NCBI RefSeq assembly: GCF_963676685.1
Contig: NC_092356.1
Span: 29,388,001 to 29,452,000 of the forward strand
DNA from: Mytilus edulis
Taxonomy: Eukaryota
Direction: 5' to 3'
Length of the DNA stretch: 64,000 bases
The notes below the pieces were generated by a model that was given only the letters and a program-made list of their open reading frames with translations, did no database searches and was not told the DNA's origin. Of this stretch, positions 34,463 to 59,049 are shown in pieces. A program made the position numbers and the translations under genes. Within the stretch, counting starts at the first letter, position 1; each line of letters begins with the position of its first letter.

Positions 34463-37400
34463 ATGGCAACTTCAATAAGTGCAGGAGAGACCTATTATCT
34501 TCGTATTGCAAATCTGCTACTAAAAGTAGCACCTTCAGCTGTCAGAGTAAAGTTTGATAAGGAATTTTATCCATCAGGATTGCAGACGGTTCTTAATCAA
34601 AAGAGACTGAAAATTCAGGGACTGACGCAGAAGAAGATAATCAATATAAAACAATGGAACTTGCTTTTTCCAAGCTCAGGTATATTTTTAAATACTTTTA
34701 ATTAAACATGTGAATTTAAGTTTGTTGTAAAGATGAATGAAGGTTCGTACAACTAACAGCAACCCAAAGAACCGAAAAAACCAATTAAGAATATATTAAA
34801 ATCTGTTTTGATAGTGATTGTCGTTTGCTACAGTTCATTATATATGTCGTGTACAAGTTGCGATTTTGTACAGGTTATAACATGTACAAAAATATTGTAC
34901 ATGTTATAACTTGTATAATGCAAAAATACAAGTTATAACATGTACAAAAGTACCTCATACATGTTATAACCTGTACAAAATATTGCTTAAAAATGGTTTT
35001 AACTTGTACAAAATCGAAAAATAAGGATATTTTTCTATTATCGCAACAGATGTTATTCCATATTGATAAAACTTTAGTAGGTGTTTCTATATGAATGGGA
35101 TTTTGAATAAATAAGCATATTCACCGCGCATAACGTCGCGTGCTTTTACCTGCACTATTTTGGTAAAAAAACGATTGATGTACAATTGGTTTTGGTTAAT
35201 AATTGCCATTACATACATTTCTCTCGGAATATGGAATAAAACAATTACTGTCTTTTGTTTCGGTAAAAATGTGGTTTAATTGACTTTTGAAAAACTGATA
35301 TTCACTTCGGCCGTTGGCCTCAGTGAATATCAGTTTTTCAAAAGTCAATAAAACTACACATTTACCTCATCAAAAGACAGTAATTGTATAATATTGACCT
35401 CAATAACATATTCATAACTTTTGTATTATTCCTTCATGTTAGTGTGTTTTCTCCTTTTTTGATACTGTAATGTCCAGGGGTCGGTATTACGAAGCATTCC
35501 TAAGACCTGTCATAAGATATATATTAGGACATGTCTTATGATCCTCTTAAGACTACCTATGGACATATCTTTATTTAATGAATTATAATTATGAGTGTCC
35601 ACTTTGAAGGCAATAGTAAAATACTTTCTTTCTAGTTGACACTAAAAGACATAAGAGGATAGCCAGGATAGATGTGTCTACAAATAAAATTGGGAATTGA
35701 AATGGGGTATGTGTCTAAAAGACAACAACCCGCCAATGGAGCAGACAACATCCAAAGGCCACCAATACATGCTTTCAAAGTAGAGGATATATATTTAAAA
35801 CATCAAAATGACATTCGCCTCATGCAATGATCTTATAGTTTATAAACAAAAATTGAGTTATAAATTTACATATGTCATGCTGAAGGCCAAAAATGTAGAA
35901 GAGTAGATCCAAAGATATTGATAATGAAGCATGGTCCAATGAAAACTATTTCAGCTCTCGCTTGCTTTTACAGAGTAAGCATATAAGACATTGTTTTAGT
36001 CTTTGCATGCTATAAAAACGAGAGGGAGGAGTATTTCCCAAAATTATTAGGAGTCGTTCTTTAATTTTATGGAAGAATTTAGTTACTATATAGTATCTAA
36101 TGTAATTGTCATTGAGGAATGCAAGCTTTTATAGTGAATAGTTTCATACGTATTTAAGCCATGATGAACTGCATGAAACATAGAATTACATGAAAACACA
36201 TTTTGCCAACATAAGTCATGAAACATATATTTCTGAAACTATGTGATCATTGTCCTCTACAGAAAAAGACACGTTCTGGCCTATTTATTGTTGTTCTTTA
36301 TGCATTGGTGAATTTAAATGTATATTTTACTTCATTAAAGTTTATTTTAAATTTTGTACAAGTTAAAACCATTTTTAAGCAATATTTTGTACAGGTTATA
36401 ACATGTATGAGGTACTTTTGTACATGTTATAACTTGTATTTTTGCATTATACAAGTTATAATATGTACAATATTTTTGTACATGTTATAACCTGTACAAA
36501 ATCGCAACTTGTACACGACATATATATGAATCCATGACAAATCGCCCCACTGGCGAATCGCCCCACACCTAATCGCCCCACTTTCTCACAAACTCGCCCC
36601 ACTTTCTAAAAAAAAAACGCCCCACTCTTGTTTACCAACTCGCACCACTTACGAAAAGGGTTAAAATCCCGCTGAAATACGGTCTATCAACTGGCCCCAC
36701 TCATGACAAATAGATAAACCACTTATAAAAAAGATTCAATCCCGTTACATTGTCACTGCCCACGTCAGTACCTTTGAAAACCTAAGTGAAGTGCTATAAA
36801 ATCAATTGCTGTTAAAAACTCTGTTTTTGCAATAAAGTTATATATATGAATGTTAATCACGCATCAATTGTATGATTATGATACAATTAACAGGTTTCTT
36901 TTCAATTGTTATACAAATAACTAAGCTTACAAGTATAAAGTTATTCTCCAATACTGATACGAAAATGTATTTGCAATTATATTTTAAGAATGTTAAAAAA
37001 GTTTAATAAATTTCGGTGTTTTTTTTTGGATTCTGTGTAGATTACAAAATTCAAAATAAGTTTTCATTTAAGTGCGGCTAGTTGGTAGACCTGAAAATTG
37101 TATATAGAAGTAGCTTTTCCTTTTTTCAATAACCAAATGAAAAGTGGCATATATATATGATTTATTTTCTATTCAAACACAAAACTTGACCTATGATTTT
37201 AATGGGATCTCGATTAAAATACTTTATTAAGGATTAGGTGCTTTCGTATTTTTCTGATAATTAAGTTGGTTTGGTGTTATATATTTTGTATTTGCTTACC
37301 TTTACGTAGCACCTGCAATCACTCTAGTAAAGTTAAAAAGGGATTAGAAAAAAATGCTTTATTTTAAGGTATAGCTATATCATCTACGTTTGATGTTACT

Positions 37401-40400
37401 CTTATGACATGCCTACTCAGGAATTTGGCAAAGATAAATATCCAAGATAACCTTCCATTATCAACTGATACGAGTGAAGAGGCAGCTTTGTCTAGAATCA
37501 AATTTTACCGAAATGAGATTGCCCATAACGAAAGTGGAACCTTGACAAAACAACTATTTCATCAGTACTGGGGAGAGATTAGTCAGGTTAGTCTTCCTTC
37601 TAAACATTAAATTACAAAAAATGAAGGTTTTGTCATTTAATAATAAACACTATGAAGTATGAATTGACACTTAAAATATGAATTATTTCTTTCACGTTAA
37701 AGGTTTTTCTGCAATGTTTATGTGTTAACTTTTACATTTCATTTAACTGCTAAACAATTGAGAAGGATAACAAAAGTAACTTAAGTAATTTTAATGTATT
37801 CGAATTTTCTGTGTGATATTAACTTAAAACTGTTCCACTAAACAATTAAAATAATTATACTTTACAGGCTATAACATTACTTGGAGGTCAAAATTACGCG
37901 CAATTTTGTGCTGATTTGAAAGTCAGAGATCTCGATGGACATGACAAGGAAGTTTTGATAGAACTTCGAAATATCAGAAGTGAAACTATCCCGAAAGGAG
38001 CAATAGGTATTTTCTTTCTATATTGCAATATGTCAAAATGTAGATAAGTTTACAGAAGTTCAAATATCATTACTTGCCTATTTAAAGACAAATTAAGGTA
38101 GCAACAAAATGTGAGGTAAACTGCCAATTAATTAAAGAATCACAATCAGAACACACATTAGAAATTCTAAACATAACTTCATATTATAGTAAAGCTGACT
38201 GTATTAAAGGGGGAAACATTGTATGTCTTTGCATATTTTATTTATTATTACTACATTATACAAACACATAAGTTTAATGGGTAAATAATCAATGCACACT
38301 ATATAATCTCGAAAATGATTTACTGATAATTCTGAAGATAAAATTGTACTTAATGGCTAAATTCAATTTTTTTTATATTTTGTTTTACATCTCTACAGTT
38401 GTACATACCAGTCTATTAGAAGAATGGTCCACTATTGATGGAAAGGTTGTTCCAACCAAAGCTTTCCAACGTATATTAGAACTTCTGGAAGAAGAACACG
38501 TGTTGACAGTTATAGGTCCACCAGGTTGTGGGAAATCGACAGCGATACACCATGCTGCTCTGCAGCTACGCGACCAAGAAGATTATGTTGTCGTTCCAGT
38601 TAATTTTCCAGGTGAAATCATACAGTACTATAATCCAGAGTGCAAACAAGTATTTGTATATGATGATATATGTGGTAAATATGCTATAAACCATCAAATG
38701 CTGGACAATTGGTGCGTACAATCTAATGCAATCCAGGTAATTTTAAGCAGCACAAAAGTGAAAATATTAAGCTCATGCAGAAGTTATATTTTCAAAGATA
38801 GATGCTTTTCTAAAATAAAACTACTTTCTGAAGTTCATTTTGACGTAACATCAGAAAATTATGCTTTGACTGAGAAAGAAAGATCTCTCATTGCAGAGGT
38901 TTACCTATCAGCATATGAAGTTACAGCATTACAGAAATCAAACGTATTTACGAAATATGACTTCTTTCCCCTTTTATGTCAGTTGTATTCATCAAGAGAA
39001 TCCACTGATGTAGTAGTATATTTTTCTGATCCTATTGATGCAATTAATGTAGAGCTAGAATCTCTAATGAACGAAAATGATCAAACAACGTTTGCTACAC
39101 TGTTTTTATTTGTTATCTACAATAACTGCATAGACGAAACCATTTTCAATCAGAAGGTAAAAATAAGAAATACTTTACTGGATTTATCAGACCATTTTGA
39201 AATTTCGTCTGTTTTGTCAATAACTGTTGTCAAATTGCAATTGAAAAAACTCATCAATAGTTTTGTAAAGAAATGTGAAAACTCTTATAGTATAATACAC
39301 GACAAAATTTTTGATATCCTGGTTTTGTTTTGCGGTAACAAATATTTTGAACTCTGTCTCGAAGTCGCACATACAGATATAATACGTGACAGATTTCATT
39401 TTGTGTCACTGAATGCGGAAGAGTCCGAAGGTATTATTCGTGTTGCTGCGAATAAAGAAGATGCATATTTTGACAGAATTTCAAATGATATTCGTCGTGG
39501 TTATATAGCCAACGTATTTACAAATAGTCAGATGAAATATATATCGTATCAACAGAAATTAATTGCACACCTGAAAACTAACGAGGGTTTGCTGAACATT
39601 GTTTTATCCTTATCAGAGAAAGAGTCTTCACCATTGCTTACTGTTGCAAATCAGGGATTCAATTATCTTGTACATTTTTTGATTGAAATTGGGTTAAGTG
39701 TTAATGTTCGCGACGAAATTGGTCGATCAACTCTCTTTCTGGCAACCGATAGTAACCATACTGAAACTGTCAATTTGTTGTTGAATAAAGCTGCTAATGC
39801 TGATCTATGTAACAAAAAACAAATATCTCCGCTCCACATGGGTTGTCTGAATGAAAACATGGAAATAGTTAAGTTGCTTTTAAACTCAAAGTGTAACATA
39901 GACATTCGGAATGATTATAATCAAACACCACTCTTCTTTGCATCGTTTGTTGGCCACAAAGAAATAGTTGAATTTCTATTAAAAAATAAGTGTAATGTCA
40001 ATATTAACAGTAAAAACAACAACACACCGTTACATGCTGCATGCTTCTTTGACAATTGTGATGTTGTGCAATTATTGCTGAATTTTAAATGTGATCCCAA
40101 CATTTCTTCTGTATATAATGAATCTCCTCTTTTTGTTGCTTGTCTACGAAACAGCGTTTTATCAACAGAACTGCTATTAGAAAAGGGGTGCAATCCTAAT
40201 GTATATACACAAGTTGATGGAAAAGTTAATCCTTGGGGTGCACTAAGAAGTGTTTCTACACTAAGTGACATAAGTCGAAATGACAAAAAAACAACAGATG
40301 CGTGCATTTCTTTTGGAGTCTGTAGAATGTTATGAACATTTTTGTGCAGAACGTGCCATGTCGTTAGGGGTCTTTATTTTTTTATTTTTGAAAGGACCCC

Positions 40401-41128
40401 CCAGTAAACCAAATTCATGTTTTGATATGACTCCAATTTTTGTAACGACATCAATTGGCGCTATTGATATTGTTGAATTGTTGTTGAAGCACAATGCTCA
40501 TCCCTGTTTAGGAAATGGTTTCAATGAAACTCCAATATTTGCTGCAGCTGAAAGAGGACTCGTAGAAATTGTAAAATTGCTTTTAAGATTTAAGGCTGAT
40601 CCAAATTTGTGTAACAATTTTAATGTTTGTCCAATGCAGCGGGCAACTGTGAACGGATTTTTGGAAGTTGTTAATGTGTTAGTAACTAATGGAGCGAATC
40701 CGAACCATTACGATTATTATACTGAGCCTCCGATGATAATTGCTACACGTCGATTCTTTTATGAAATTGTCCAAATACTGCTGGAAAACAATGGGGATCC
40801 AAACATTACCAACTTTGAAGGCAAAACCTGTTTGCATGTTGCATCAGAAAATGGAGATCTAGAGATGGTTAAAATATTGCTAGAAAATCATGCGGATCCA
40901 AACGTTATTGATAATAATTCAATATCACCTCTGTGTGTAGCTTCCAAAAGTGTACATTTCAATTTATTTGATATTTATCTAGCAAGACATGGATATCTAG
41001 ATGACGATCAAATATTGTACTCAGACCAACTGGCACTTCAAAAACAGTGCACTGAACTCGTTAATGTATTGTTAATCTATGAAGCTGATCCTTTAAGCGT
41101 TATTGAATCTGGTTTTAATATTATATAG
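34463..41128 (+). CDS. HEPN(DZIP3-like)-nSTAND3 NTPase-ankyrin repeat protein, copy 1; +1 frameshift at A7 run 40285-40291 (836 aa as assembled, 1100 aa if repaired)
   Basis: Exons 34463-34679, 37369-37586, 37868-38006, 38399-41128. HEPN_DZIP3-like motifs QWNLLFP, FDVTLM..LLRNL and RIKFYRNEIAH; Walker A GPPGCGKS (38515-38538); Walker B VFVYDD; 6+6 ankyrin repeats. Removing one A restores colinearity with copy 2. Confidence 0.88.
34841..36525. mobile_element. Foldback-like non-autonomous DNA transposon with ~173-bp TIRs, in intron 1 of HEPN-STAND copy 1
   Basis: 34841-35013 is the near-perfect reverse complement of 36351-36525. The TIRs are built of TGTACA/GTTATAAC sub-palindromes; flanks are TA-rich; absent from intron 1 of copy 2. 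Confidence 0.8.
35241..35387. repeat. ~147-bp palindrome (hairpin MITE-like) nested in the foldback element
   Basis: ACAATTACTGTCTTTTG...TTGACTTTTGAAAAACTGATATTCAC / GTGAATATCAGTTTTTCAAAAGTCAA...CAAAAGACAGTAATTGT. Confidence 0.75.
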
Positions 41129-42316
41129 AATATCAAACCTCATCGTTGTCCTAATAATTCAAATTTTATATATTAATGAGTTTCATATTGATCTTGAATC
41201 TGTATAAATTTTATGACTCTTTTATAACTTCGGTTATGTTCTTTATTGAGTATTTTGTAAATGGGTTGAAAAATCAAAATGTATGATGCCATGTCACATA
41301 TGCATGTATATATATTAAATAACTTTAGAGTGGTCTCTAAAATGAAATGGTAGTTTATGGATACTAAACATTTTAGACTGGTATATTTTTGCAAGAATAT
41401 GAAGAACAAAATATCAGATAGATTATTTCATTTTACATATTAACATCCAAAATGACGATATACATTTGAAAGGATTTAAAAAGCTACAATTCCATGATCA
41501 TTTTTATACACAGACGATTTGTTGTTGTGAACATTTTATGAATATTATATTACTGATTTTATCAATTGAGATATATAAGGATTTGTCATGTTCCGGTGAT
41601 TGTTTGTACATGCACATTAGCAGATGAATACTGTGTAAACACTCAACAGATCTCATTTCAATTGAAAAATGTGTTTTTATTTATGTTCACTGCAAAAGTT
41701 GTCTGTTTTCACTGATGTTTTTATGACACTTAAAATTTACATTCGTGCATTACTTGTATATAAAGTTTAAGTACTGACGTTTAAGTTGTAAATGAGGAAT
41801 TACACAGTAGTCATATCAAAATGAAATTGAACAGATTTTTTCCGGTTAGTTCTTTTTCATGTGAAATGCAGAGTAGTTTTAGTAAATCCAAATTAAAGTG
41901 CTCAAGTATAAATTGAAAGATAGCGATGAGGCCTAATTTTGTAGTGAGCTTTAAGAGCTACTATCGTGGTATGTGCACATTTTATAGGTGTTTGTTTTGT
42001 GTTAAAACTTAAGACTGAAACAAAGTCAATTATATGTGCCGACATATATACAAAAACACTTGTTATTCAATTGTGTATATAAAGTATCATGCGATTGTTT
42101 ATATTTCTGTTTGTCGAAATGTACAATTTTTTTTTTGCACTTTTGAAAATTAAAAAAAAATCCAAGTACTGGAAGTTCAGCAATCTAGCAAGTAGCCGCT
42201 TCATTTATATTTTGCACAGTTATTCTTGTGTTCTTATATAAATCACTTTGCACTTCAGGAAAGTGTTGTATATTTATTATTATGATTTTCATATATCAAA
42301 ATTATAGTTACAATTT

Positions 42317-43407
42317 TTAACCGGATTTTTGTGACAAAAATGTCGGTTATTGATTTGGGGATGTACGGCGGGCGGGCGGTCGGGCGGGCGGGAATCAAAT
42401 GTTGTCCGTGCATTAACTCATGAACCGTTCAACCAAAGCTTTTAAAATTTTAATATGTTGTTACTGACAACTAAATGAAGGTCAAGTTCAATAATGGCGA
42501 TTTTGACTTTTACCGTTCAGGAGTTATGGTTCTTGAAAGATTGAAAAATGGAGTTTCCAGTCGTGTCCCTGCATTTACGCATGAACTGTTCTACCTAAGC
42601 TTTCCAAATTTTAATATGTTGTTACTGATGACAAAATGGAGATCAAGTCCAATAATGGCGATTTTGACTTTTACCGTTCAGGAGTTATGGTTCTTGAAAG
42701 ATTGAAAAATGGAGTTTCCAGTCGTGTCCGTGCATTTACGCATGAACTGTTCTACCTAAGCTTCCCAAATTTTAATATGTTGTTACTGATGACAAAATGG
42801 AAGTCAAGTTTAATAATGACGATTTTGACTTTTACCGTTCAGGAGTTATGGTTCTTGAAAGATTGAAAAATGGTGTTTCCAGTCGTGTTCGTGCATTTAC
42901 GCATGAACTGTTTTACCAAAGCTTCCCAAATTTTAATATGTTGTTACTGATGACAAAATAGAGGTCAAGTTCAATAATGACGATTTTGACTTTTACCGTT
43001 CAGGAGTTATGGTTCTTGAAAGATTGAAAAATGGTGTTTCCAGTCGTGTCCGTGCATTTTCTCATGAACCATTCAACCAAAGCTTTTGAAATTTTTATAT
43101 GTTGTTACTGATGGCAAATTAGAGGTCAAGTTCAATAATGACGATTTTGACTTTTACCGTTCAGGAGTTATGGTTCTTCAAAGATTGTGAAATGGCGTTT
43201 CCATTCACGTTGTTGCATTTACTCATGAACCATTCAATCTAAGCTTTTAAAATTTTAAGATGTTGATACTGATGACAAAATGGAGGTCAAATTTGATATT
43301 GACGATTTTCACTTTCACCATTCATCAGTAATGGTTCTTGTGATATTGCCAGGACACAAATAAATATTAATAAATCCGGTTTGCTGTCGTTGTGACAGCC
43401 TCTTGTT
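42317..43407 (+). mobile_element. HINE-like element with ~6 x 161-bp internal tandem repeats
   Basis: Same termini as 14017-14790; units about every 161 bp from ~42419. Absent from the paralogous region downstream of copy 2. Confidence 0.78.
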
Positions 43408-46400
43408 TAAATATTCCACATGTAACGCAGGTTATATTTTAGCTATGTGTTTCACAGTTATTTTGTAGTTCTTCATGTATCTTCGTTTACCTTTATCGTT
43501 ATGTCGATTGCGTCGCTTATGTTACAGGCTTGTTACTAGTATAACTGTTTATTTTTATTGCAAATTAGAATTTTTGAAGACATACATGTATCAGTCAATT
43601 TGTCATAGATTTTAACAAACGTAATCAATGCATCACTGGGAAATTATTGTGTCAGTGATTTCGATGCCATAAATTACGTAAACATGCTAAAACTTTTACT
43701 AAATTCTGTCATAGATACACAGATTTGATTAGTACATTTGGCTGTATCTGTAGAAAAATTATCAAAATGATATTTAACATCCTAAATTTTACGGTAATAT
43801 TGTACTAATAGCGCGCCGTGTAAACTCATCGAACCATTTAACAAACTTATTAGTAAGGGTTATCGTACCAATACAGTAATTAGATCTCTGATTATAGTTC
43901 ACATTGGCACTAATATCGATTTTAGCAATAGCAAATTAAAACATAACTAAATTTCTTTTCTTTTGAGGCGGGGTGTATATAGACACACACACGTTAATTG
44001 TTATCTCTAAAGAAGTCGCTACTCACTATCCTACATTTCAACTACCTGTCGATACATTTATTTTTGGCATTGCACAAGTCATGTCTTCTCTGACTGTTCA
44101 TGACATTAAAATACTTAAAGACTGGGATTTGTTTTAGTCAATTGTAGTCTCTGATGCATGATTTTTTTTTATTATTACTTGTTTTGGCTTTTAACTAGCT
44201 GTCAGTAACTGCGAGTACTCTCAAATCGTACTCTCTTGTTAATTTGACCTGTTGATACTATTTGTAATGCTTTTTTGTTATTTTATATTTACATGGATCT
44301 TGTTTATATACCAGCTTTGATTATGTGAATATCTACTAAAAAGTAAAACAACGAAAATACTGAACTTGGAGGAAAATCCAATCGGAAAGTCCATAATCAC
44401 ATGGCAAAATCAAAAAACAAAACACATAAAAAACGTATAGACAAGAACTTTCATATTCCTGACTTGGTACAGGCATTTTGAAATGTAGAAAATGGTGGAT
44501 TAAACCTGGTTTTATAGCTAATTTTACTAATTTTCACTTCTTCGTACTATGATCATCAAGATTATTCTCCTTAAATCTGTATAGGGTTTTATCGAGCTCT
44601 AATTGTATAGTTTTATTGTTGATATTCACCCCATATGTATCTAGTTTTAAATAAGGTATTTACATGACAAAACCTTCTTGGTATTCCTAATTATTGGAAG
44701 ATTTTATGTACACAGAAGTAGTATACCTAAAACGACAAAGTTATTTTTCACTTACCTGTATATATTATGAGAAACCGTTTTTTTTTCAAAAATGATTATT
44801 TTCTTAGGGTTGTTAAATATTTCGGGGTAGTGTCTTGCCATACCTTTGTTTGGACTTGTTTGTTTACTTTTGGCCTTGAATGTTTGTCCCTAATATTTTG
44901 TAAACTATGTATTGGCATTCAGGTATCGGAGATCAAATTTATATTATTCGTTCATAGTGTGTTGATTTACGTTTTTTGATTGAGTTAAGCCTTCCAATTG
45001 ATATTTTATCGTGTGTTTTTCTATGTTGTGATGTTATACTATTGTTTCAGAAAAAGGGAGACGGTTTGGTACCATTAAAACTTTTAATCCCGCTGCAAAT
45101 GTTTGCACCTGTCCTAAGTCAGGAATCTGATGTACAGTAGTTGTCGTTTGTTTATGTAATTTATACGTGTTTCTCGTTTCTCGTTTTTTTTATATAGATT
45201 AGACCGTTAGTTTTACCGTTTGAATGGTTTAACACTTGTAATTGTGGAGCCCTTTATAGCTTGTTGTTCGATGTGAGCCAAGGCTCCGTGTTAAGGCCGT
45301 ACATCGACCTATAATGGTTTACTTTTAAAAAATTGTTGTTTGGATGGAGAGTTGTCTCACTGGCACTCATACCACATCTTCCTATATCTATCTACAGATT
45401 GTTTACTTTGGGATAAGAAATGCACTTTTATCGTTGAACAGTTAACTCCGTATAACTTTCTTTTTGTTCTGTATGCTATATTTTTCAAACAAACGTCTTG
45501 TACGAAACTATATTTTACGTCATATTGCTTTAGTTGGCATAAAACGATGACTGTAAATGTCATGCAATGATTTGTAGGACAAGTTTGATTTGAAATAGCT
45601 ATTCAAAAAGACTTGTACGATTTCTATAACATTAAATAATATATATTAATCATTATTTGTCTGTATTATGCATATGATATATAAGTAACTTCATGACAAT
45701 ATTAAAATGTAAAACCTTATTTTGTTACTTACAAATGATCTGCACTTTAAGTAAAATAGCGTGTCTTACAAAAATAACAAGATGTTGTAAAATTGCCTTT
45801 GCGACATCTATCCACATAAGATAACAGGACAATGAATGTTAAACCTGAAGGTTAGATTGACATCCGTTTGCAACCAAATACCATATGACAAATTATTAAA
45901 TAATAAAACAATATGAACAAATTCAAAAGTAAAATCACAAAAAACTCCGAGGAAAATTCAATCGTAAAGTCCCTACTCAAATGGAAAAATCAAATAACAA
46001 AACACACCAAACGAATGGACAACAACTGTCATATTCCTGATATTGTACAGACATTTTCAAATGCAGAGAATGGTGGATTAAACCTGGTTTTATAGCGTAA
46101 ATCTCTCACTTATATGACAGTCTCATCAAATTCCGTTATATTTACAACGATGCGTGAACAAAGCAGACATAAGTCAAAATACTGATACAGCAGTCATCAC
46201 TGTGTTAGGAGTAAATCCATAGTTTATCGCCTTGTTTTGATTTAAATAATTTACATTAAATGTAAAAATACTCGGAAGTTTAAATGCAACTCTCTACAAC
46301 AACATTACTATTCATTTCAATGTTGAGTAATCCTAACCCCACACAGTAATCATGTGTTCCAGAAGAGTCAGAATTCCTTGCTCCATTTTTGACAGAAAAA

Positions 46401-49536: not shown

Positions 49537-51526
49537 ATTATGGTTCAGTGTAACCTGCTTAATCCGACACCTGAGTATTTTAACATCCTACTTTAACCGA
49601 CACATTTTCATGGAGCCAAAATATACCTATCTTTGCAGAAAAAAAACCTGAGTATTTCGACACCCTGGTGTATCCGACATTTTTTTCAGGTCACCTAGTG
49701 TGTCGAATTATACAAGTTACACTGTATCTATAAAGATCTAAGACTGAAAAAAATATGTCGGTCGCTGGTGAGTTGAGTCACAGACATATCACATCGTTCA
49801 CATAATTTGTAATAGTGTATTTAATATTTGAACAGTATCGATTTCAATCGTTTGTTCTCATAACTCTGCCACAAAAGTTTTAGCGTAAGAAGCATATCCC
49901 CGATATTGAAGTCCGTAAGGTGTGAAAGTCAAGATGTCTAATGTATCAATTGAGATATGTATTAACTTTAAATTGTAACCGGGTTTGTACTACCATTAAC
50001 AACACAAAGGGTGCCACATGTAGAGCCTGATCTGGATACACTTCCGGAGCACCAGAGACGCTCCCTAGTTTGATATGTCTCCGGAGAAATTATTCAGAAT
50101 GGTATGAAGGCGTGTCTGAGACATGTTTTAAGATGTAAAACAAAGCTTTCTTATAACATCCTACATGTAACGCACTTCTCTAATTCTGAAAATAAGTCGA
50201 GAATTAAATGAAATGTATTTTGATATTCTCAATATTGTTTAAAGGTCGAGAAGAAATGTCTTTTATGAGAGAAAAAAAAATTAACACAAAATCAATTTTA
50301 ATGTAATACTTATGCATACATTATTATATTATACTATCTAAAATGCCAAATTTAAAAACTTTGATTCATACAAGTACCTGGACCTTTGGCTGAATGAACA
50401 TTTAAATATGAATAACATCATTTGGGAATTGGCCAAGGTAGCTAGTAGTGCACTAGGTGCTCTATACGGAAAATCAATAAGTATGACTCATCAAGCTGAA
50501 GGAATCAACAGTGGGAATTAGTATATAGCGAACATTATAATATGCTGTGATAGGAATATAAGGTCCTTTCTAATATAAGTTCTAATTGCAAGTCTTATTC
50601 TGGAATATAATTTCAATTGGAACAAATATTACAGCATTTGTTCCTTACGGATTAAAGGGTATATAATATTTGTTCCAAAAATAACCCATTAAAATATAAA
50701 TGTGTATGTGTTATGTATGTTCCATTTTTAAAGTCCGTCGGTATAATACAAACATAGGTAAATTGATTGATCGCCAGAATTAATACGACCTTGAACGTGA
50801 CTACTGTGGGCTGTAGAATATTCACTTTTACATTACAATGTAATGTGACCGTGAGTTAGAGGAAACCCTGTTTTGTTGAGGTAAGGTAGATAACACTTGA
50901 AAAATCTTGTTTTTATTGAAAACGATATGTTATTTTCGATATTTTCGAAAATCGAACCAGGAACAAGTATAAGCAGTTACTTTCATATAGGAAATCGGTG
51001 GATAGTTTATGATTTATATTTTGGATATTGAGTAAACTGGGTCAAATAGTTAAAAAAAATGTACAGACTATCCCAAATGTTTGATTTAAATGCTGTAGTA
51101 ATAGATATAACATATCGTGATGTTAAACACAGAAAATGCTATGTGTTCACATGAAGACTTCAAGTGTTGTATAATAATGACTGTAAAATCTATCTGATTT
51201 CGTGAAGTTATGTTGAATAAATGTTTACCGTTTGAAATTGATAGTGACAAGTCGAGCGTAAATTTAAGACATTTAAATTAGGGATCATCTCAAAAGTAGG
51301 AATTTAAATTTGATTGAATAGGTGTATTAATAGCTTTATTAACTATAAAAAAGTTATTAAACCATTGTAAAAGCAAACAATTGTTAATTCAGACATATTC
51401 GCCTTTTTCAAAAATGATTTGTTGGATGGTTGAAAGTATGCTCTAATTGTTTTGATAACATCGTGTACGAGGTCCTGGCACATAAGAGAAGAAAAGATAC
51501 CAAACGGACATTCAAACCCATAAAAC

Positions 51527-52865
51527 AACTAGAGGCTCTAAAGAGCCTGTGTCGCTCACCTTGGTCTATGTGAATATTAAATAAAGGAAGCAGATGGATT
51601 AATGACAAAATTGTGATTTGGTGATGGTGATGTGTTTGTACATCTTACTTTACTAAGCAGTTTTGCTGCTTACAATTATCTCTATCTATAATGAACTTGG
51701 CCCAGTAGCTTCAGAGGAAAATGTTAATAAAATTTACAAATTTTATGAAAATTGTTAAAAATTGACTATAAAGGACATTAACTCCTTAGGGGGTCAATTG
51801 ACTATTTCGGTCATGTTAACTTATTTGTAAATCTTACTTTGTTGAACTTTATTGCTGTTTACAGTTTATCTCTATCTATAATAATATTCAAGATAATAAC
51901 CCAAAAATGGCAAAATTTCCTTAAAATTGCCATTTCAGGGGCAGCAACACAACAACCAGTTGTCTGATTCGTCTGAAAATTTCAGGGCAGATAGATCTTG
52001 ACTTGATAAACAATATGACTACTTGAAAGAGTTGCTAGTAATGCTTAAGTTTCAGAGTTATAAGCCAAAATCTTCTTTTACCCTTATGTTCTATTTTTAG
52101 CCATGGCGGCAATCTTGGTTGGTTGGCAGGGTCACCGAACACATTTTTTAAACTAGATACCCCAATGATGATTGGTGACAAGTTTGGTTAAATTTGTCTT
52201 ACTAGTTTTAGAGGAGAAGTTTTTTGTAAACGATAACAAAAATTGTTAAAAAATTGTTAAAAAATGACTATAAAGGGCAATAACTCCTTAAGTGGTCAAT
52301 TGACAATTTTGGAAAGTTTACTTTTTTGTAGATCTTACTTTGCTGAACATTATTGCTGTTTACAGTTTATCTCTATCTATAATAATACTCAAGATAATAA
52401 CCAAAAAATGGCAAAATTTCCTTAAAATTGCAAATTCAGGGGCAGCAACCCAACAACCAACTGTCCGATTCATCTGAAAATTTCAGGGTAGATAGATCTT
52501 GACTTGATAAACAATTGACTCCCTTTTAAGATTTGCTCTAAATGCTTTGCTTTCAGAGTTATAAGCCAAAATCTTCATTTTACCCCCTATGTTCTATTTT
52601 TAGCCATGGCGGCCATCTTGGTTGGTTGGCCGGGTCACCGAACACATTTTTTAAACTAGATACCCTAATGATGATAGTGGTCAAATATGGTTAAATTTGG
52701 CCCAGTAGTTTCAGAGGAAAATATTTTTGTAAAACTTAACGACGCCGGACGACGGACGACGACAGACGACGGACGACGGACGACGGACAACGGACGACGG
52801 ACGATGGACGACGGACGCCAAGTGATGAGAAATGCTCACTTGGCCCTATGGGCCAGGTGAGCTAA
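51527..52865 (-). mobile_element. Helitron/HINE-like element, two ~500-bp internal units, inverted
   Basis: Reverse-complement termini AACTAGAGGCTCTAAAGAGCCT ... GGCCAGGTGAGCTAA; (GACG)n tract at ~52741-52817. Confidence 0.78.
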
Positions 52866-53617
52866 AAATAAACAGACAACACAAATATTCAATACTTTAC
52901 TTCAAGAAACAAGTTAGAAATCAAAGAAAAAACAAGGACTAGTCCCTTTATTACACATACAGAACTTTGTTTCTGGAAATAAACACGAAACAAAATACAA
53001 GGGAATTTTAAGCTCCAAACATTGTTAGAAAAGTACAATTTTATAACACAAAAGCATAGATCCAGATTTAAATCAACTGAAAAAACCAAATGCATTCATA
53101 ACGATGATAGAGTCATAAAATTCGGGGTCCCTAGAAAATCAATTATACAGGAAGATGCAGGTAAACATTTTGGTCAGGGTGGTAAAATCAATGTTTGTTC
53201 CTATTTGATAAAGGAGATATAATTTCTTAATGCTTGTAGATTAAGATTGTGATAAGTTTGCTTTCTTTCAGGCGGAGTTTAATCCGTATACATTAAACTA
53301 ACATTTGATTGGATGGTATATTGGAGATTAGGATTATCCATTGGCAATTGAACATGTGAACATACGGGACAAATATTTTTCAAACATATTTGATAAACTG
53401 GATTTTATAACATTACATAAACCATTCGAAATATTTCTAAATAAGCAAATTGTAAACCTTGATTTCAGTATTTAAAAAAAGTCACATATGAGTGATCATT
53501 TGCTTGTCTTTATAGTTCTATTAATGATAAATGTACCAGATATTTGGATGATAAATCGTTTGTTTATGATGATTTTATTAAACAACTCGAGGGAGGTCTT
53601 TTTTCTTTCTTTCAGAA

Positions 53618-56600
53618 ATGGCAACTTCAATAAGTGAAGAAGAGACCTATTATCTACGTATTGCAAATTTGTTGCTCAAAGTAGCACCTACAGCTGTCAG
53701 AGTAAAGTTTGATAAGGAATTTTGTCCATCAGGATTGCAGACGTTTCTTAATCAAAAGAGAGCGAAAATCCAGGGACTGACGCAGAAAAGGATAATCAAT
53801 CAAAAACAATGGAACCTACTTTTTCCAAACTCGGGTAAATATTTGATTAGTTACGGAACTGAACTTTCAGTTTGTTATAAGTATGATTGGTCATAAAACA
53901 TGTAACAAATCATACGACAGCAAAAACAGTTTTTTTCCAAATTATTTCAAAACAGTTTCGATCATGAAAAAAGCATTTAACACATACATAGATAAGATTT
54001 TTTCGATCTATATCTTACACTAAACATGACTTCTGGCTTTAAATGGGAGCTCGATTAAAATATTCAATTGGAGATTGGGTTGGGAAATGCTTTTGCTTTG
54101 CCTGCAGGTATGTAAATTGTCCTCGTTATATGTTTTTTGAGAAGCTATATGTGTATATTTATAAAGTTCTGACTGCTAGATCTTCGTTTTGTCTAACTAA
54201 CAAATTATGTGTGTTTGGATTGCTCACACATTTCCCCCAACATAACAAAACTGTAAAATGTTTTCATACAAACGGGAGGTTTGGCTAGCTATGAAATATT
54301 TGTATCAAGTAACGAAAATGGCAGGGTTTCCACTTATTCCGTTGCTCGACGAAATTCCCACTTTTGAGGCTAATAATTTTGTCAATACTAGTTCTATTGA
54401 TATATTCAGTACTTTATACTTCATCTGTTATTTACGTCGATACATGTAATGAAAATCGATACTATGTATTTTGCTAATTTATGAAAAGTAAATATTTTAC
54501 TGTTCATTTTCTATACTCCCAGACTTTTCAAATCAAATTTGTTTGTGGCGATTGTTTCTTTATACGATTCACTTTACCTTAATATTAATTTGATCTGCAT
54601 ACTGTTTGATTAGATGCGGCTGATGAATCTAATGGAGACAAACCGATTAAGTGTACTGAATAAACGGATATTGATGTTTTATTTATTGCCATAAAATTGT
54701 GAATGGAAATGGGGAATATGTCAATGCAGAAACAACCGGACAAAAGAGCAGATAACAGCCGAATGCCACCAAAAGGTTTTCACCACAGCGAGAAAAAACT
54801 GCACCCGGAGAAGGTCCTCATTTGGCCCCTAAAAGAAATTGTGTGTCTGTTCAACAAATGACATATATGCTTGAAATTGATAATTTTAGACAAAGGAACA
54901 AGAACAATATAAACCATCTCACTAACTATTTTTAAGGTTTGATTATAAACTAGATATACTTAGTATTCAATCATGGGTTTTTAGAATGTATAAAAACATA
55001 AGGGACAAACATTGATTGACAAACATATCTTATATACCTCAAGTTACTAAAAGGTGTCATAAACGGGACCATTGTTTACCTAGCTTCAAGCTGATAAAAG
55101 ACACGCATAAATAATAATATACTTTCAGGTACAGCCGACTCGTCTACTTTTGATGTAACTCTTATGATATGCCTACTCAGGAATCTGGCTAAAATGAATA
55201 TCCGAGACAACCTTCCAGTATCTACTGATACAACTGAAGGGGCAGCTATGTCAAGGATTAAATTTTACCGAAATGAAATTGCTCATAATGATAGTGGAAC
55301 ATTGACAGAAAAACAATTTCATCAATTTTGGGAAGAAGCTAGTCAGGTTAGTTTGACTTCTAAGCATTAAGTTACAACAAATGAAAGTTTTGTCATTTTA
55401 TATATAAAAGACTATTATGCAACTGTCATAAAATGAGATGTTTTGCTAGCTTTAGTCAGGTTTTATCCACCGTTTTCTACATATGAAAATGCCTGTACCA
55501 CGTCAGGAATATGATAGTTTTTATTCATTCCTTTGATGTTTTGGGTTTTTAATTTTGCCATTTGATTAGCAACTATCCTTTTTGAACTTTCTTCGATGTT
55601 CAGTATTTTTGTGATTATACTTTTTAAGTATGAGTTGACACTAACAATGCATGTTTTTTCTTTAATGTCAAATGTTACTACTAGAGTTTTAAGGCTTTAT
55701 CTGCAGTGAATATGTGTTAAGTTAAGCAATCGGTTTAACTACATAACAATTGAGAAGGGAATTCAAAGGGATTTTTTTTAATTTTTCAGGTAATCGCATT
55801 TTCTGTATTATGTTAACTTACAAATTTTCCAAAGGACGAAATACTTATATATTATAGGCTATTACTCTCTTTGGAGGACACAATTACATGCAACGGTGTG
55901 CTGATTTGAAAGTCTGTAGTCTTGATAGTCATGACAGGGAGATTTTGATAGAAATTAGAAATATGAGAAGTGAAAATATACCAAAAGGAGCAACAGGTAT
56001 GCTTTGTAATTGCAACATGCAACAATTAAAGCACCACTTTCAAATGTCATGAACCAATGATACAAATGAAGATAACAAACAGAAACTTCTCAGAGAAGAA
56101 AAGTAAGACTGTACCAAGAACCGAATATATGTACACATTTATGACATCTTTTAAACAATTATTGTTGAACAATAAATTAGTAGTCACATTTCTATCTTAC
56201 AAATACATAGGTAATACAGTCTTTTAACCGAGAAAATGAAATACAGATAATTCATAATATCAAGTTATAAATGATTACTAAATTAATCTATTTTAATATT
56301 GTTTTACATGGGTGCAGTTGTACATAACAGTCTAGTAGAAGAATGGTTCCGTATTGATGAAAAGGTTGTTTCAACTAAAGCTTTCCAAGGTGTATTAGAA
56401 ATTCTCCACGACGAACAAGTTTTGACAGTTATTGGTCCGCCAGGATGTGGAAAATCGACAGCGATCCACCATGCTGCTCTGCAGCTACGCGATCAAGAGG
56501 ATTATGTTATCGTTCCAGTTAATTTTCCAGGTGAAATTATACAGTACTATAATCCAGAGTGCAAACAAGTATTTGTTTATGATGATATATGTGGTAAATA

Positions 56601-59049
56601 TGCAATAAACCTTCAAATGCTGGACAATTGGTGTACACTATCAAATGCGATCCAAGTCATTCTAAGCAGCAGCAAAAACGTGAAAATATTAAGCTCATGC
56701 AGAAATTATATTTTTAAAGATAGATTATTTTCTAAAGTTAGATTTCTGTCTGAAGTTCATTTTGACATAACATCTGGAAATAATGCTTTGTCTCAGAAAG
56801 AAAGATCTCTCATTGCAGAGGTTTACCTATTAAGAAATGACGTTGACTTGTTAATGAGATCAAACATAGTAATGAAATATGACTTCTTTCCATTATTATG
56901 TCAATTGTACTCATCAAAAGAGTCCAGTGATGTAGAAAAATATTTTACAGATCCTATGGAAGCAATAAATGTAGAGCTAGAATCTCTAATGAACGAAACT
57001 GATCAAACAACTTTTGCAACACTATTTTTATTTGTTATCTACAATAACTGCATAGATGAAAACATTTTCAATCAGAGGGCAGAAATAAGGAATATTTTAC
57101 TAAATTTATCTGATCATTTTATTATTTCGTCCGTTTTGTCAATAAATGTTGTCAAATTACAATTAAATAAGCTAATCAATAGTTTTGTAAAAAAATGTGC
57201 AAATTCTTATACCACTATACACGACAAAATTTTTGACATCTTGTTTTTTTTCTGCGGAGACAGGTATTTTGATCTCTGTCTCGAAGTCGCACATACCGAT
57301 TTAATACGTGATCGATTCCAGTTATCGTCACTCCATGCAAAAACTTCTGACGGTATCGTTATTGTTGCTGTGGGTAAAGAAGACGCATATTTTGACAGAA
57401 TTTCAAATGATATTCGTAATGGTCATATAGCTAACGTTTTTATAAATAGTCAGATGAAATATTTATCTTATCAACAGAAAATAATTGCAAACCTGAAAAA
57501 GAACAAGGAGTTGCAGAAAATTATTTTATTCTTATCAGATAAAGAATCTTCACCATTGCTTACTGTTGCAAATCAGGGATTCAATTATCTCGTACACTCA
57601 TTGATTGAAATTGGGTTAAGTGTAAATGTTCGCGACGAAACTGGTCGATCACCTCTCTTTCTGGCAACAGATAGTAACCATACTGATACTGCCGATTTGT
57701 TGCTGAATAAAGGTGCTAATCCTGATCTATGTAACAACAGACAAATATCTCCGCTCCACATGGCATGTCTGAATGAAAACATTGAAATTGTTAAATTATT
57801 GGTAAACTCAAAGTGTAACATAGACATTCGTAATGTTTATGACCAAACACCACTCTTCTTTGCATCATTTGTTGGTCAAAAAGAGATAGTTAAATTTTTA
57901 CTAGAAAATAAGTGTGATGTTAATATTAATAGTAAACACAACAATACACCGTTACATGCTGCATGTTACTTTGACAATGTGGAGGTTGTTCAATTATTGC
58001 TGGATTTTAAATGTGATCCCAATATTTCATCTGTATATAATGAATCGCCCCTTTTTGTTGCTTGTATGAGAAACAGCATTTTATCAGCAGAACTTTTGTT
58101 GGAAACGGGATGCAATCCTAATGTGTGTACGCAGTTGGAAGGAAAGATCAATCGGGTTTTTGCGTTTAGAAATATTCACATATTAATCAATATATCTCAA
58201 AAAGACAAAAATCATCAGAAACGTGCAATTCTTTTGGAGTTTGCAAACTCTTATGAAAACGTTTGTGCAGAGCATGCAATGGGTATGAGTATCCTTTGTA
58301 TTTTAGCTTTTAATGGACCCCTAAGTAAACCCGATTCAGCATTCAATATGACTCCACTTTACATTGCGTCAATAAATGGTTTCACTAATGTAGTTAAATT
58401 GTTGTTGATTTACAAAGCTAATCCCTGTTTAGGAACTGGTTTCAATGAAACTCCAATATTTTCTGCAGCTGAAAAAGGTCGCGTCGAAATTGTAAAATTG
58501 CTTTTAAAATTTAAGGCCGATCCAAATTTGTGTAACAAACATAATGTTTGTCCATTGCAACGGGCATCTTTGAACGGATTTTCGGAAGTTGTATATATGT
58601 TAGTGATTCATGGAGCGAATCCGAATCATTACGATGGTTACACAGAGCCTGCGGTCAATCTTGCTACACGTCAATCTTTTTATGAAACTGTTCAAAAACT
58701 GCTGCAATTAAATGGGAATCCAAATATTCCCAACTTTGAAGGAAAAACATGTTTGCATATAGCTTCAGAAAATGGAGATGTGGAAATGGTTAAAATATTG
58801 TTAGAAAATCACGCAGATCCAAACATTCTTGATAATGATTTAATATCACCTCTGTTTCTGGCTTCTAAAAGTGTACACGTTGAGCTGTTTTATAACTATT
58901 TGGTTAAAAATGCTTATCTGGATGACGATCCAATCTTGTACCAAGACCAACTGGCTCTTCCAATACAATGGACCGCAATTGTTAAGTTATTGTTGCGTTA
59001 TAAAGCTGATCCATTGAGCGTTTTTGAATCTGGTTTCAATTGTCTTTGA
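53618..59049 (+). CDS. HEPN(DZIP3-like)-nSTAND3 NTPase-ankyrin repeat protein, copy 2 (intact, 1101 aa)
   Basis: Exons 53618-53834, 55129-55346, 55858-55996, 56318-59049. Exons 1-3 have the same lengths as in copy 1 (217/218/139). RNEIAH at 55269-55286, GPPGCGKS at 56434-56457, VFVYDD, 12 ankyrin repeats. Confidence 0.92.
55430..55625 (+). repeat. Unclassified interspersed repeat
   Basis: AAAATGCCTGTACCAAGTCAGGAATATGACAGTT-like core recurs at ~30440 (+) and inverted at ~44450, 46030, 47470 and 62115. Confidence 0.55.

What the first reader, a model, noticed from the sequence alone, without database searches (positions are those of the whole stretch)
34463..59049. Tandem pair of HEPN-RNase / nSTAND3 NTPase / ankyrin proteins: candidate animal NLR-like sensor-nuclease immune system
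Seen: splicing joins three small ORF fragments to the large ORFs, giving ~1100-aa tripartite proteins. They have an N-terminal DZIP3-type HEPN domain with an intact R-x4-H motif (RNEIAH) in both copies, a central STAND-type NTPase (GPPGCGKS, VFVYDD) and 12 C-terminal ankyrin repeats. The ORF track hides this architecture. Established: effector-STAND-repeat is the NLR and bacterial antiviral STAND (Avs) layout. HEPN domains are RNases activated by dimerisation (Cas13, Csm6, and the related KEN domain of RNase L/Ire1), and RNase L also uses ankyrins as its sensor. Inference: ligand binding by the ankyrins drives NTPase oligomerisation, bringing HEPN domains together to cleave RNA. That would be an NLR with a directly fused nuclease rather than a death-fold adaptor. 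I know of no functional characterisation of such proteins in animals.
Basis: partly seen in the sequence, partly recalled or inferred. Interest (0 to 1): 0.9.

Follow-up and report, generated by a model that had tools for sequence, protein, structure and literature searches.

The report
Mussel HEPN-STAND-ankyrin gene array
Two neighbouring blue-mussel genes, part of a five-gene array, encode proteins that join a predicted RNA-cutting HEPN domain to an ATPase switch and ankyrin repeats; this gene type is already described by computation in bivalves and corals and has hundreds of copies in this genome, and no one has tested its function.

Summary
The window is Mytilus edulis. Copy 2 (53618-59049) is a four-coding-exon gene of 1101 aa. 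It is identical to a public NCBI model. All three junctions appear in transcript contigs of two or three runs.

Its domains are HEPN_DZIP3 (E 9e-31, RNEIAH), nSTAND3 (E 1e-23, GPPGCGKS, VFVYDD) and 6+6 ankyrin repeats. Copy 1 has the same exons but carries one extra A in an A7 run (40285-40291). As assembled it ends at 836 aa after six repeats, so it is not ~1100 aa.

The pair is part of a five-gene tandem array; three members lie just outside the window. The genome holds at least 150 HEPN_DZIP3 matches above the Pfam cut-off (651 first-look candidates). It also has about 500 first-look candidates for this NTPase module.

The sensor/switch/RNase reading is reasonable. Catalytic motifs are conserved, dN/dS is 0.30, ankyrin binding-face positions diverge faster, and modules have recombined between copies.

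The reading is not new. Anantharaman 2013, Takeuchi 2022 and Noel 2023 proposed it, and SAMD9/9L is a characterised animal STAND protein with a fused RNase. This scan noted the same gene type three times elsewhere in this genome. No biochemistry exists for the family.

Verdict: a new member of a known kind, of modest interest.

The parts
50780..50880 (+). Copy 2, non-coding 5' exon. The 3' end at 50880 is firm. The 5' end was not determined.
   Evidence: Loose ends of transcript contigs in X1 and X3 before 53614 map uniquely to 50849-50878. The donor is GTAAGG at 50881 and the acceptor is TTTCAG at 53615.
53616..53834 (+). Copy 2 coding exon 1 (ATG at 53618). It encodes the N-terminal helices of the HEPN_DZIP3 domain.
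   Evidence: Pfam HEPN_DZIP3 E 4e-7, profile positions 1-37. Residues 1-72 of P0001. Junction 53834|55129 seen in X1 and X2.
55129..55346 (+). Copy 2 coding exon 2, the HEPN core. It carries the R-x4-H motif RNEIAH at 55269-55286.
   Evidence: Pfam HEPN_DZIP3 E 2.7e-11, profile positions 50-114. R120, N121 and H125 are at least 90% conserved in 53 relatives. Junction 55346|55858 seen in X1, X2 and X3.
55858..55996 (+). Copy 2 coding exon 3, the C-terminal helices of the HEPN domain.
   Evidence: It aligns to the C-terminal third of single-exon HEPN_DZIP3 paralogues. Residues 146-191 of P0001. Junction 55996|56318 seen in X1, X2 and X3.
56318..59049 (+). Copy 2 coding exon 4. It holds the nSTAND3 P-loop NTPase, with Walker A GPPGCGKS at 56434-56457 and Walker B VFVYDD at 56566-56586. 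A helical and winged-helix region follows, with a conserved IHDK at 57217-57228. Ankyrin repeats 1-6 lie at about 57535-58128. An insert of about 80 residues follows. Ankyrin repeats 7-12 plus a cap lie at about 58336-59046, and the stop codon ends at 59049.
   Evidence: Pfam nSTAND3 E 9e-24 and ankyrin E 1e-68. Motif conservation. AlphaFold2 model with pLDDT 85.9. Repeat register.
34461..34679 (+). Copy 1 coding exon 1 (ATG at 34463).
   Evidence: Pfam HEPN_DZIP3 E 6.5e-6. Residues 1-72 of P0007. Canonical AG/GT splice sites.
37369..37586 (+). Copy 1 coding exon 2, with RNEIAH at 37509-37526.
   Evidence: Pfam HEPN_DZIP3 E 8.9e-14.
37868..38006 (+). Copy 1 coding exon 3.
38399..40335 (+). Copy 1 coding exon 4 as annotated. 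It holds nSTAND3, the helical region and ankyrin repeats 1-6, and ends at a premature stop.
   Evidence: Pfam nSTAND3 E 2.3e-25. P0007 is 836 aa and ends here.
40285..40291 (+). Copy 1: an A7 homopolymer with one A more than copy 2. This is the frameshift site, in the linker between the two ankyrin blocks.
   Evidence: Pairwise alignment and translation.
40286..41128 (+). Copy 1: ankyrin repeats 7-12 in the +1 frame, open for about 280 codons.
   Evidence: ORF 40280-41128 with Pfam ankyrin E 2e-55. No stop in 278 codons, and dN/dS 0.46 against copy 2.

Best explanation
The region holds two members of a five-gene tandem array in Mytilus edulis. The array belongs to a family with hundreds of members, found in bivalves and other marine invertebrates. 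Each protein has an N-terminal DZIP3-type HEPN domain, an nSTAND3 P-loop NTPase with helical and winged-helix modules, and twelve C-terminal ankyrin repeats.

Shown here:
- Copy 2 is transcribed, spliced as predicted and intact.
- Copy 1 is frameshifted in a poly-A run as assembled.
- The HEPN R-x4-H motif, Walker A and B, and an hHD motif after the winged-helix hairpin are kept in all five copies. They are at least 90% conserved across 53 relatives.
- The genes evolve under purifying selection.
- The ankyrin binding-face positions diverge faster than the framework.
- The effector/switch part and the sensor part have different histories among the copies.

Inferred mechanism: this is a cytosolic STAND-type conflict sensor. 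The ankyrin solenoid holds the NTPase in an ADP-bound closed state. Binding of a pathogen-derived or danger ligand allows nucleotide exchange and oligomerisation. That brings HEPN domains together into composite R-x4-H active sites. These cleave RNA (host tRNA, rRNA or mRNA, or viral RNA) and shut down translation in the infected cell.
For: Gene model and expression.

Domains: HEPN_DZIP3 E 8.7e-31 and nSTAND3 E 1.2e-23 on P0001; exon by exon.

Motif conservation: D81, R90, R115, R120, N121, H125, G234, G236, K237, D280, D281, R320 and H493-D494-K495 are at least 90% conserved in 53 relatives of 25-88% identity. All five array copies keep RNEI(A/V)H, GPPGCGKS, xFVYDD and xHDK.

Fold: the full-length AlphaFold2 model has pLDDT 85.9. 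It shows an all-alpha region at residues 1-190, an alpha/beta P-loop core, a helical region with a beta-hairpin, and 6+6 ankyrin repeats. A single-exon HEPN_DZIP3 paralogue was folded with an alignment that includes this gene's exons. Its best match among 48,161 PDB chains is the Csm6 HEPN domain (Z 7.9). Twelve of the top 50 matches are HEPN proteins: Swt1, Csm6 three times, 1wwp, HepS, AbiF, sacsin, Cas13, LsoA, HI0074 and HepT.

Selection: dN/dS is 0.30 between copies 1 and 2, with dS about 0.39. Canonical target-binding positions of the ankyrin repeats have dN 0.31 against 0.19 for the framework. Only 50 of 5000 random position sets reach that value.

Modularity: copies 3 and 4 are 96-98% identical in the HEPN exons and 94% in the NTPase, but 65% in repeats 7-12. 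Copies 1 and 3 are 74% identical in the NTPase but 84.5% in repeats 1-6.

Family size.

Published proposals of the same function: PMC3710099, PMC9646362 and PMC10236652.
Against: No activity, ligand, oligomer or immune phenotype is known for any member of this family; nine papers that name the domain were found and the three read in part are genome surveys.

The structural match to HEPN domains is middling (Z below 8 for a helical bundle). It was obtained on a paralogue, not on this protein, and Foldseek found nothing.

The dN/dS on the ankyrin face is 0.56, not above 1. Exposed repeat positions are less constrained in any ankyrin protein.

One raw RNA-seq run had almost no reads on the exons, and no induction data were examined.

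Human DZIP3 and sacsin use HEPN domains without proven RNase activity.
Confidence: 0.6

Rival explanations
1. The HEPN domain is not a nuclease here. It acts as an RNA-binding or protein-interaction module. The proteins would then signal or scaffold, for example by recruiting other factors on oligomerisation, rather than cut RNA.
For: Sacsin's isolated HEPN domain is reported to bind RNA (title and abstract of PMC13669270, listed). Anantharaman 2013 notes that some HEPN lineages are non-catalytic binders. No cleavage has been shown for any DZIP3-type HEPN domain; nine papers that name the domain were found and the three read in part are genome surveys.
Against: The R-N-x3-H motif is intact in all five array copies and at least 90% conserved across 53 relatives. 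That pattern is expected of a catalytic site and is lost in known inactive HEPN lineages. Takeuchi 2022 found the motif in 194 of 202 pearl-oyster members.
Confidence: 0.2
2. The genes act in a conflict other than antiviral defence. Candidates are control of retroelements, allorecognition, or defence against the transmissible neoplasia known in mussels. The same switch logic would apply with a different trigger.
For: The family is very large, arrayed and recombining, as in allorecognition and transposon-control families. Kaur 2021 (PMC8195603) raises retroelements and infectious tumour cells as triggers for comparable bivalve expansions. Takeuchi 2022 suggests transposons as targets.
Against: Nothing in the sequence tells triggers apart. 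This is a variant of the main explanation rather than its opposite.
Confidence: 0.12
3. For copy 1 only: it is a real, recently broken allele on its way to becoming a pseudogene, or a truncated six-repeat variant. It is not an assembly error.
For: There is one extra A in an A7 run and a premature stop at 40335. NCBI models it as 836 aa. Birth-and-death turnover is usual in such arrays, and an earlier follow-up in this scan found decayed copies in a sister array.
Against: The 278 codons after the shift are still open in a genome of 31% GC, with dN/dS 0.46 and the same dS as the rest. The break is therefore very recent, polymorphic, or a homopolymer error of the assembly. All splice sites and motifs are intact.
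Confidence: 0.45

Closest known systems
DZIP3/hRUL138-type HEPN proteins of bivalves and cnidarians, fused to NACHT or other STAND NTPases and to repeats (Anantharaman 2013 PMC3710099; Takeuchi 2022 PMC9646362; Noel 2023 PMC10236652)
   Same: The HEPN family is the same (PF18738), with the same Rx4H motif and the same N-terminal position in a tripartite effector/NTPase/repeat protein. Both show lineage-specific expansion in tandem arrays, and the same RNase-in-defence function has been proposed.
   Different: The published bivalve examples emphasise NACHT with LRR, TPR or WD40 repeats. Here the NTPase matches Pfam nSTAND3 and the repeats are ankyrin. The 2013 table lists ankyrin fusions. I found no paper that spells out the nSTAND3-ankyrin combination.
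Bacterial antiviral STAND proteins (Avs/AVAST) and bacterial HEPN-STAND-TPR proteins
   Same: The layout is tripartite: effector, STAND NTPase and repeat sensor. Avs5 carries the same Pfam nSTAND3 domain (bioRxiv 10.1101/2025.07.08.663546). Bacterial N-terminal HEPN plus STAND fusions are noted in PMC3710099.
   Different: No PADLOC Avs model matches P0001; the best NTPase hit is PDC-S73 at E 4e-8. The Avs5 effector is SIR2 and its sensors are TPR, Sel1 or PPR repeats. Common descent rather than convergence was not tested.
SAMD9/SAMD9L
   Same: It is an animal, cytosolic, Avs-like STAND protein with a directly fused RNase effector that arrests translation. It is a tRNA-Phe anticodon nuclease (PMC10246899). 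It is structurally similar to Avs5 (PMC12680541).
   Different: The effector is AlbA_2, not HEPN. The sensor is TPR/OB, not ankyrin. No sequence similarity to it was detected here.
RNase L
   Same: Ankyrin repeats act as the sensor, and a HEPN-superfamily (KEN) RNase is activated by dimerisation (established knowledge; KEN is listed as a HEPN family in PMC3710099).
   Different: The domain order is reversed: ankyrin at the N-terminus and KEN at the C-terminus. The central module is a pseudokinase, not a P-loop STAND NTPase. The ligand, 2-5A, is made by OAS.
Csm6 and Cas13 HEPN RNases
   Same: They are the best structural matches to the DZIP3-type HEPN model: Csm6 with Z 7.9, 5.9 and 5.8, and Cas13 with Z 5.0. 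They have an R-x4-6-H active site that needs two HEPN domains.
   Different: They are regulated by CARF/cyclic oligoadenylate or by crRNA, not by a STAND NTPase. Sequence identity is only 8-14%.

Membership tests
HEPN superfamily, DZIP3/hRUL138 family (PF18738) | Match to the family profile above the curated cut-off | tested here: met
   P0001 scores 107.1 bits and P0007 112 bits, against a cut-off of 27. By exon in copy 2, exon 1 scores 30.4 bits and exon 2 scores 43.9 bits. The three exons tile colinearly along single-exon paralogues.
HEPN superfamily, DZIP3/hRUL138 family (PF18738) | Conserved R-x4-6-H motif, with N after the R | tested here: met
   RNEIAH in copies 1, 2 and 5, and RNEIVH in copies 3 and 4. 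R120, N121 and H125 are at least 90% conserved in 53 relatives.
HEPN superfamily, DZIP3/hRUL138 family (PF18738) | All-alpha HEPN fold | tested here: met
   Residues 1-190 of the P0001 model are all helical, with pLDDT about 90. For the paralogue model, the best of 48,161 chains is the Csm6 HEPN domain (Z 7.9, rmsd 3.5, 113 residues aligned), and 12 of the top 50 are HEPN proteins. Caveats: the Z-scores are middling, the model is of a paralogue, and Foldseek found nothing.
HEPN superfamily, DZIP3/hRUL138 family (PF18738) | Metal-independent endoRNase activity that needs two HEPN domains | not testable with these tools
   This needs biochemistry.
STAND NTPases (nSTAND3, PF20720) | Match to the family profile, with Walker A and Walker B motifs | tested here: met
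   nSTAND3 scores 83.9-89.5 bits against a cut-off of 27.2. GPPGCGKS and xFVYDD are present in all five copies. G234, G236, K237, D280 and D281 are invariant or at least 90% conserved.
STAND NTPases (nSTAND3, PF20720) | Helical and winged-helix modules after the P-loop core, with a conserved histidine (MHD-like) | tested here: inconclusive
   The model shows helices at 351-476, a beta-hairpin at 482-491 and then IHDK at 492-495. H493, D494 and K495 are at least 90% conserved. Equivalence to the MHD histidine is my inference.
STAND NTPases (nSTAND3, PF20720) | C-terminal repeats that form a superstructure | tested here: met
   There are twelve 33-residue ankyrin repeats in two blocks. The best PDB matches are ankyrin-R, ankyrin-B and DARPins.
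Canonical animal NLR (NACHT-LRR) | NACHT NTPase domain | tested here: not met
   No NACHT (PF05729) hit at E below 1. The best hit is nSTAND3, and NPHP3_N reaches only E 0.004-0.006.
Canonical animal NLR (NACHT-LRR) | Leucine-rich repeat sensor and death-fold effector | tested here: not met
   The protein has ankyrin repeats in place of LRR and HEPN in place of CARD, PYD or Death.
Bacterial Avs (AVAST) | Match to an Avs protein model | tested here: not met
   PADLOC gives no Avs family. It reports PDC-S73 at E 4e-8 on residues 200-324, plus ankyrin models.
RNase L | KEN domain and pseudokinase, with N-terminal ankyrin repeats | tested here: not met
   There is no kinase or KEN hit, and the domain order is the reverse.

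The most novel reading that the evidence does not exclude
The nSTAND3-ankyrin branch of the HEPN_DZIP3 family is a working animal counterpart of bacterial Avs5 and vertebrate SAMD9. Each array member would be a ligand-gated RNase whose ankyrin face recognises a different pathogen molecule. Recombination within the array would re-pair conserved effector/switch cassettes with diverging sensor cassettes to make new specificities.
Probability: 0.4. Interest if true: 0.65.

Novelty: new member of a known kind. Interest (0 to 1): 0.3.

Why it matters
Bivalves lack adaptive immunity. They carry very large, variable families of intracellular sensors whose functions are almost wholly unknown. HEPN-STAND proteins are among the most expanded of these, and no member has been tested.

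Copy 2 is a clean, expressed, intact gene with a confirmed model. It has four close paralogues that differ mainly in the ankyrin sensor. That makes it a practical candidate for the first biochemical test of whether animal HEPN-STAND proteins are regulated RNases.

The finding does not reveal a new kind of system. The architecture, its expansion and its proposed role are in the literature, and the gene models are in public annotation.

Tried and rejected
- **Homodimer prediction of the HEPN part** (P0001 residues 1-195, two copies): no verdict, score 0.00. It counts neither for nor against dimerisation.
- **Foldseek of the full-length model against the PDB**: it returned only ankyrin proteins, so it says nothing about the HEPN or NTPase parts.
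- **Foldseek of the HEPN paralogue model**: no match at E below 1.
- **Profile search of the HEPN alignment against PDB sequences**: only chance hits, E at least 0.4.
- **NTPase plus helical module against PDB sequences**: nothing at E up to 1.
- **PADLOC**: no Avs model matched.
- **Rfam on the whole window**: nothing.
- **Raw RNA-seq run X21**: almost no reads on the exons, so it gave no strand or start-site information.
- **Attempt to settle the copy 1 frameshift from another M. edulis assembly**: P0005 is only 90% identical to copy 1, so it is not the same allele.
- **Kaur 2020 (PMC7159879)**: it does not mention nSTAND or these proteins.
- **Pseudogene reading for copy 2**: considered and rejected. 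The ORF is intact, the transcripts are spliced and dN/dS is 0.30.
- **Joined spliced model**: Searches on the window were exon by exon, by reference. For the joined protein I used only the public records P0001 and P0007 by id. Copy 1's two ankyrin-frame pieces were kept apart throughout.

Full report
**What is in the window.** The window is AT-rich (about 31% GC) and has no N runs. The large ORF of copy 2 is 100% identical to P0001, an NCBI 'uncharacterized protein [Mytilus edulis]' of 1101 aa. The next hits come from M. galloprovincialis, M. californianus, M. trossulus, M. coruscus and oysters. The window is contig 13, positions 29,388,001-29,452,000, of a 1.37-Gb assembly.

**Gene model of copy 2.** Reading the sequence gives four coding exons:

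| Exon | Coordinates | Note |
|---|---|---|
| 1 | 53616-53834 | ATG at 53618 |
| 2 | 55129-55346 | |
| 3 | 55858-55996 | |
| 4 | 56318-59049 | |

- All introns are GT..AG, and the coding length is 3306 nt, which gives 1101 aa.
- The whole-codon translation of each exon, taken separately, sits at residues 1-72, 74-145, 146-191 and 193-1101 of P0001. Residues 73 and 192 come from split codons.
- Contigs of three public runs cover the exons and leave the unique intron sequence at zero depth, so they are transcript assemblies.
- These contigs carry the joints 53834|55129 (two runs), 55346|55858 and 55996|56318 (three runs each).
- Loose ends in two runs show a further non-coding exon ending at 50880, spliced to 53616.
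They are spliced.

**How the joined protein was handled.** Searches on the window were made exon by exon, by reference. The joined protein was used only as the public records P0001 and P0007.

**Copy 1.**
- It has the same exon lengths and canonical splice sites: 34461-34679, 37369-37586, 37868-38006 and 38399 onward.
- A codon-level alignment with copy 2 shows one extra base in a run of seven A at 40285-40291.
- The frame then stops at 40335. NCBI's model P0007 is this truncated 836-aa protein.
- The last six ankyrin repeats lie in the +1 frame, ORF 40280-41128.
- That frame is still open for 278 codons in an AT-rich genome, with dS like the rest of the gene and dN/dS 0.46.
- The shift is therefore very recent, polymorphic or a homopolymer error.

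**Domains.**
- Exon by exon in copy 2, exon 1 matches HEPN_DZIP3 profile positions 1-37 and exon 2 matches positions 50-114 (50-115 in copy 1). Exon 2 also has weak cross-hits to two other HEPN families at the R-x4-H helix. Exon 4 matches nSTAND3 and ankyrin repeats.
- On the public full-length proteins, HEPN_DZIP3 scores E 8.7e-31 (P0001) and 2.7e-32 (P0007). nSTAND3 scores E 1.2e-23 and 3.9e-25.
- The three small exons tile colinearly along single-exon HEPN_DZIP3 paralogues of the same genome.
- In 53 relatives of 25-88% identity, several positions are invariant or at least 90% conserved. These are the HEPN residues R120, N121 and H125; Walker A G234, G236 and K237; Walker B D280 and D281; R320; and an H493-D494-K495 motif.

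**Structure.**
- AlphaFold2 on P0001 with that alignment gives pLDDT 85.9 and pTM 0.66.
- The model shows, in order, an all-helical region at 1-190 and an alpha/beta P-loop core.
- A helical region and a beta-hairpin at 482-491 follow, with IHDK directly after the hairpin.
- The model ends with six ankyrin repeats, an insert of about 80 residues that is partly disordered, and six more repeats plus a cap.
- I read the IHDK position as analogous to the MHD histidine of other STAND proteins. That is an inference.
- Foldseek on the whole model finds only ankyrin proteins.
- The tools cannot crop a model, so I folded a single-exon HEPN_DZIP3 paralogue (L014) with an alignment that includes this gene's exons. 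The model has pLDDT 84 and pTM 0.80.
- Foldseek finds nothing for it. An exhaustive alignment to 48,161 PDB chains puts the Csm6 HEPN domain first (Z 7.9).
- Twelve HEPN proteins are among the top 50: Swt1, three Csm6, 1wwp, HepS, AbiF, sacsin, Cas13, LsoA, HI0074 and a HepT toxin.
- The Z-scores are middling for a helical bundle, but the enrichment is clear. No member of the family has a solved structure.

**Genomic context.**
- The pair is part of a five-gene, same-strand array with 14-18 kb spacing. Three more members lie just downstream of the window. Each has the same four-exon structure and an intact large ORF.
- The five genes correspond to NCBI models P0007, P0001, P0003, P0006 and P0008.
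- All five keep RNEI(A/V)H, GPPGCGKS, xFVYDD and xHDK.
- Genome-wide, HEPN_DZIP3 has 651 first-look candidates. All 150 that were scored lie above the Pfam cut-off.
- The NTPase-helical module of copy 2 has 504 candidates. All 104 that were scored have E below 1e-50.
- This scan has already flagged the same gene type three times elsewhere in this genome.

**Evolution.**
- Between copies 1 and 2, dN/dS is 0.27 for HEPN, 0.32 for the NTPase, 0.38 for the helical region and 0.25 for repeats 1-6. It is 0.30 overall, with dS about 0.39. This is an old duplication under purifying selection.
- Across the five copies, the six canonical target-binding positions of each ankyrin repeat (2, 3, 5, 13, 14, 33) have dN 0.31 and omega 0.56. 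The framework has dN 0.19 and omega 0.29.
- Only 1% of random position sets are as variable. This fits sensor diversification but does not prove positive selection.
- The modules have different histories, as the nucleotide identities below show:

| Pair | HEPN exons | NTPase | Repeats 1-6 | Repeats 7-12 |
|---|---|---|---|---|
| Copies 3 and 4 | 96-98% | 94% | 77% | 65% |
| Copies 2 and 5 | 92% and 90% | 86% | not quoted | 65% |
| Copies 1 and 3 | not quoted | 74% | 84.5% | not quoted |

- Recombination or gene conversion has thus re-paired effector/switch cassettes with sensor cassettes, as in plant NLR clusters.

**Mechanism.**
- Shown: an intact, expressed gene with conserved catalytic motifs, purifying selection, a faster-evolving binding face and module shuffling.
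- Inferred from established knowledge of STAND proteins and HEPN RNases: ligand binding by the ankyrin solenoid releases an ADP-locked state.
- The NTPase then oligomerises, HEPN domains pair, and RNA is cut, which stops translation.
- A prediction of HEPN homodimerisation gave no verdict and is not used as evidence.

**Comparison with what is known.**
- Anantharaman et al. 2013 defined the DZIP3/hRUL138 HEPN family. They listed fusions to ankyrin, NACHT, CARD, Death and LRR, with expansions in Nematostella, oyster and Capsaspora. They proposed an RNase L-like defensive role for animal HEPN-NACHT/Death proteins (there the CXorf38 family) and compared them with bacterial HEPN-STAND proteins.
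- Takeuchi et al. 2022 counted 202 such genes in the pearl oyster, more than 50 of them HEPN-NACHT. The Rx4-6H motif was present in 194. They suggested degradation of viral or transposon RNA.
- Noel et al. 2023 report many N-terminal DZIP3-like HEPN domains on coral NLR-type proteins.
- The Pfam nSTAND3 domain also marks bacterial Avs5, but no PADLOC Avs model matches this protein.
- SAMD9/9L is a characterised animal STAND protein with a fused RNase and a structural likeness to Avs5. So 'an NLR-like protein with a directly fused nuclease' is not without precedent in animals.
- These proteins are not NLRs in the strict sense, since they have neither NACHT nor LRR.
- I found no functional study of any DZIP3-type HEPN-STAND protein.

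**Verdict.** This is a correct and careful observation of a real, expressed gene family member. One of the two copies is frameshifted as assembled. The interpretation matches published computational proposals. It is a new member of a known kind. Interest is modest, and lies mainly in copy 2 as a well-defined candidate for a first biochemical test.

Noticed in passing
G000:C13:29453500-29494800 (loci L001, L002, L003), just downstream of the window: Three more intact paralogues lie on the same strand, with the same four-exon structure. The 'pair' is therefore a five-gene array. NCBI models them as P0003 (1033 aa), P0006 (1100 aa) and P0008 (809 aa, lacking the N-terminus).
   Followed up: yes
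window exons and L001-L003: The array members have a mosaic history. The HEPN and NTPase parts group copies (3,4) and (1,2,5). The ankyrin blocks group copies (1,2,3) apart from 4 and 5. This points to recombination or gene conversion between modules. No formal test was run.
   Followed up: partly
window 55400-55630 (intron 2 of copy 2): An interspersed repeat of about 230 bp has at least 4325 first-look candidates in the genome, at 80-84% identity. It has very high depth in the RNA contigs, so it is probably a SINE- or MITE-like element. It was not classified.
   Followed up: partly
window 54622-54808 (intron 1 of copy 2): A second short stretch has very high depth in all RNA runs, and many reads run on into unlike sequence. 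It is presumably another abundant transcribed repeat.
   Followed up: no
window 50780-50880: A non-coding leader exon of copy 2 lies 2.7 kb upstream of the start codon. No similar sequence was found upstream of copy 1 within the window, so copy 1's promoter and leader are not identified.
   Followed up: partly
window 25124-25631: Four overlapping ORFs of 133-164 aa lie on both strands, in a stretch with strong AT skew. It looks like low-complexity or repeat sequence and was not examined.
   Followed up: no
L004-L012 (single-exon HEPN_DZIP3 paralogues elsewhere in the genome): Several paralogues have K in place of the catalytic R (KNNYVSH, KNKYVSH) and an R/K-x5-H spacing. Part of the wider family may therefore be catalytically altered.
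   Followed up: no
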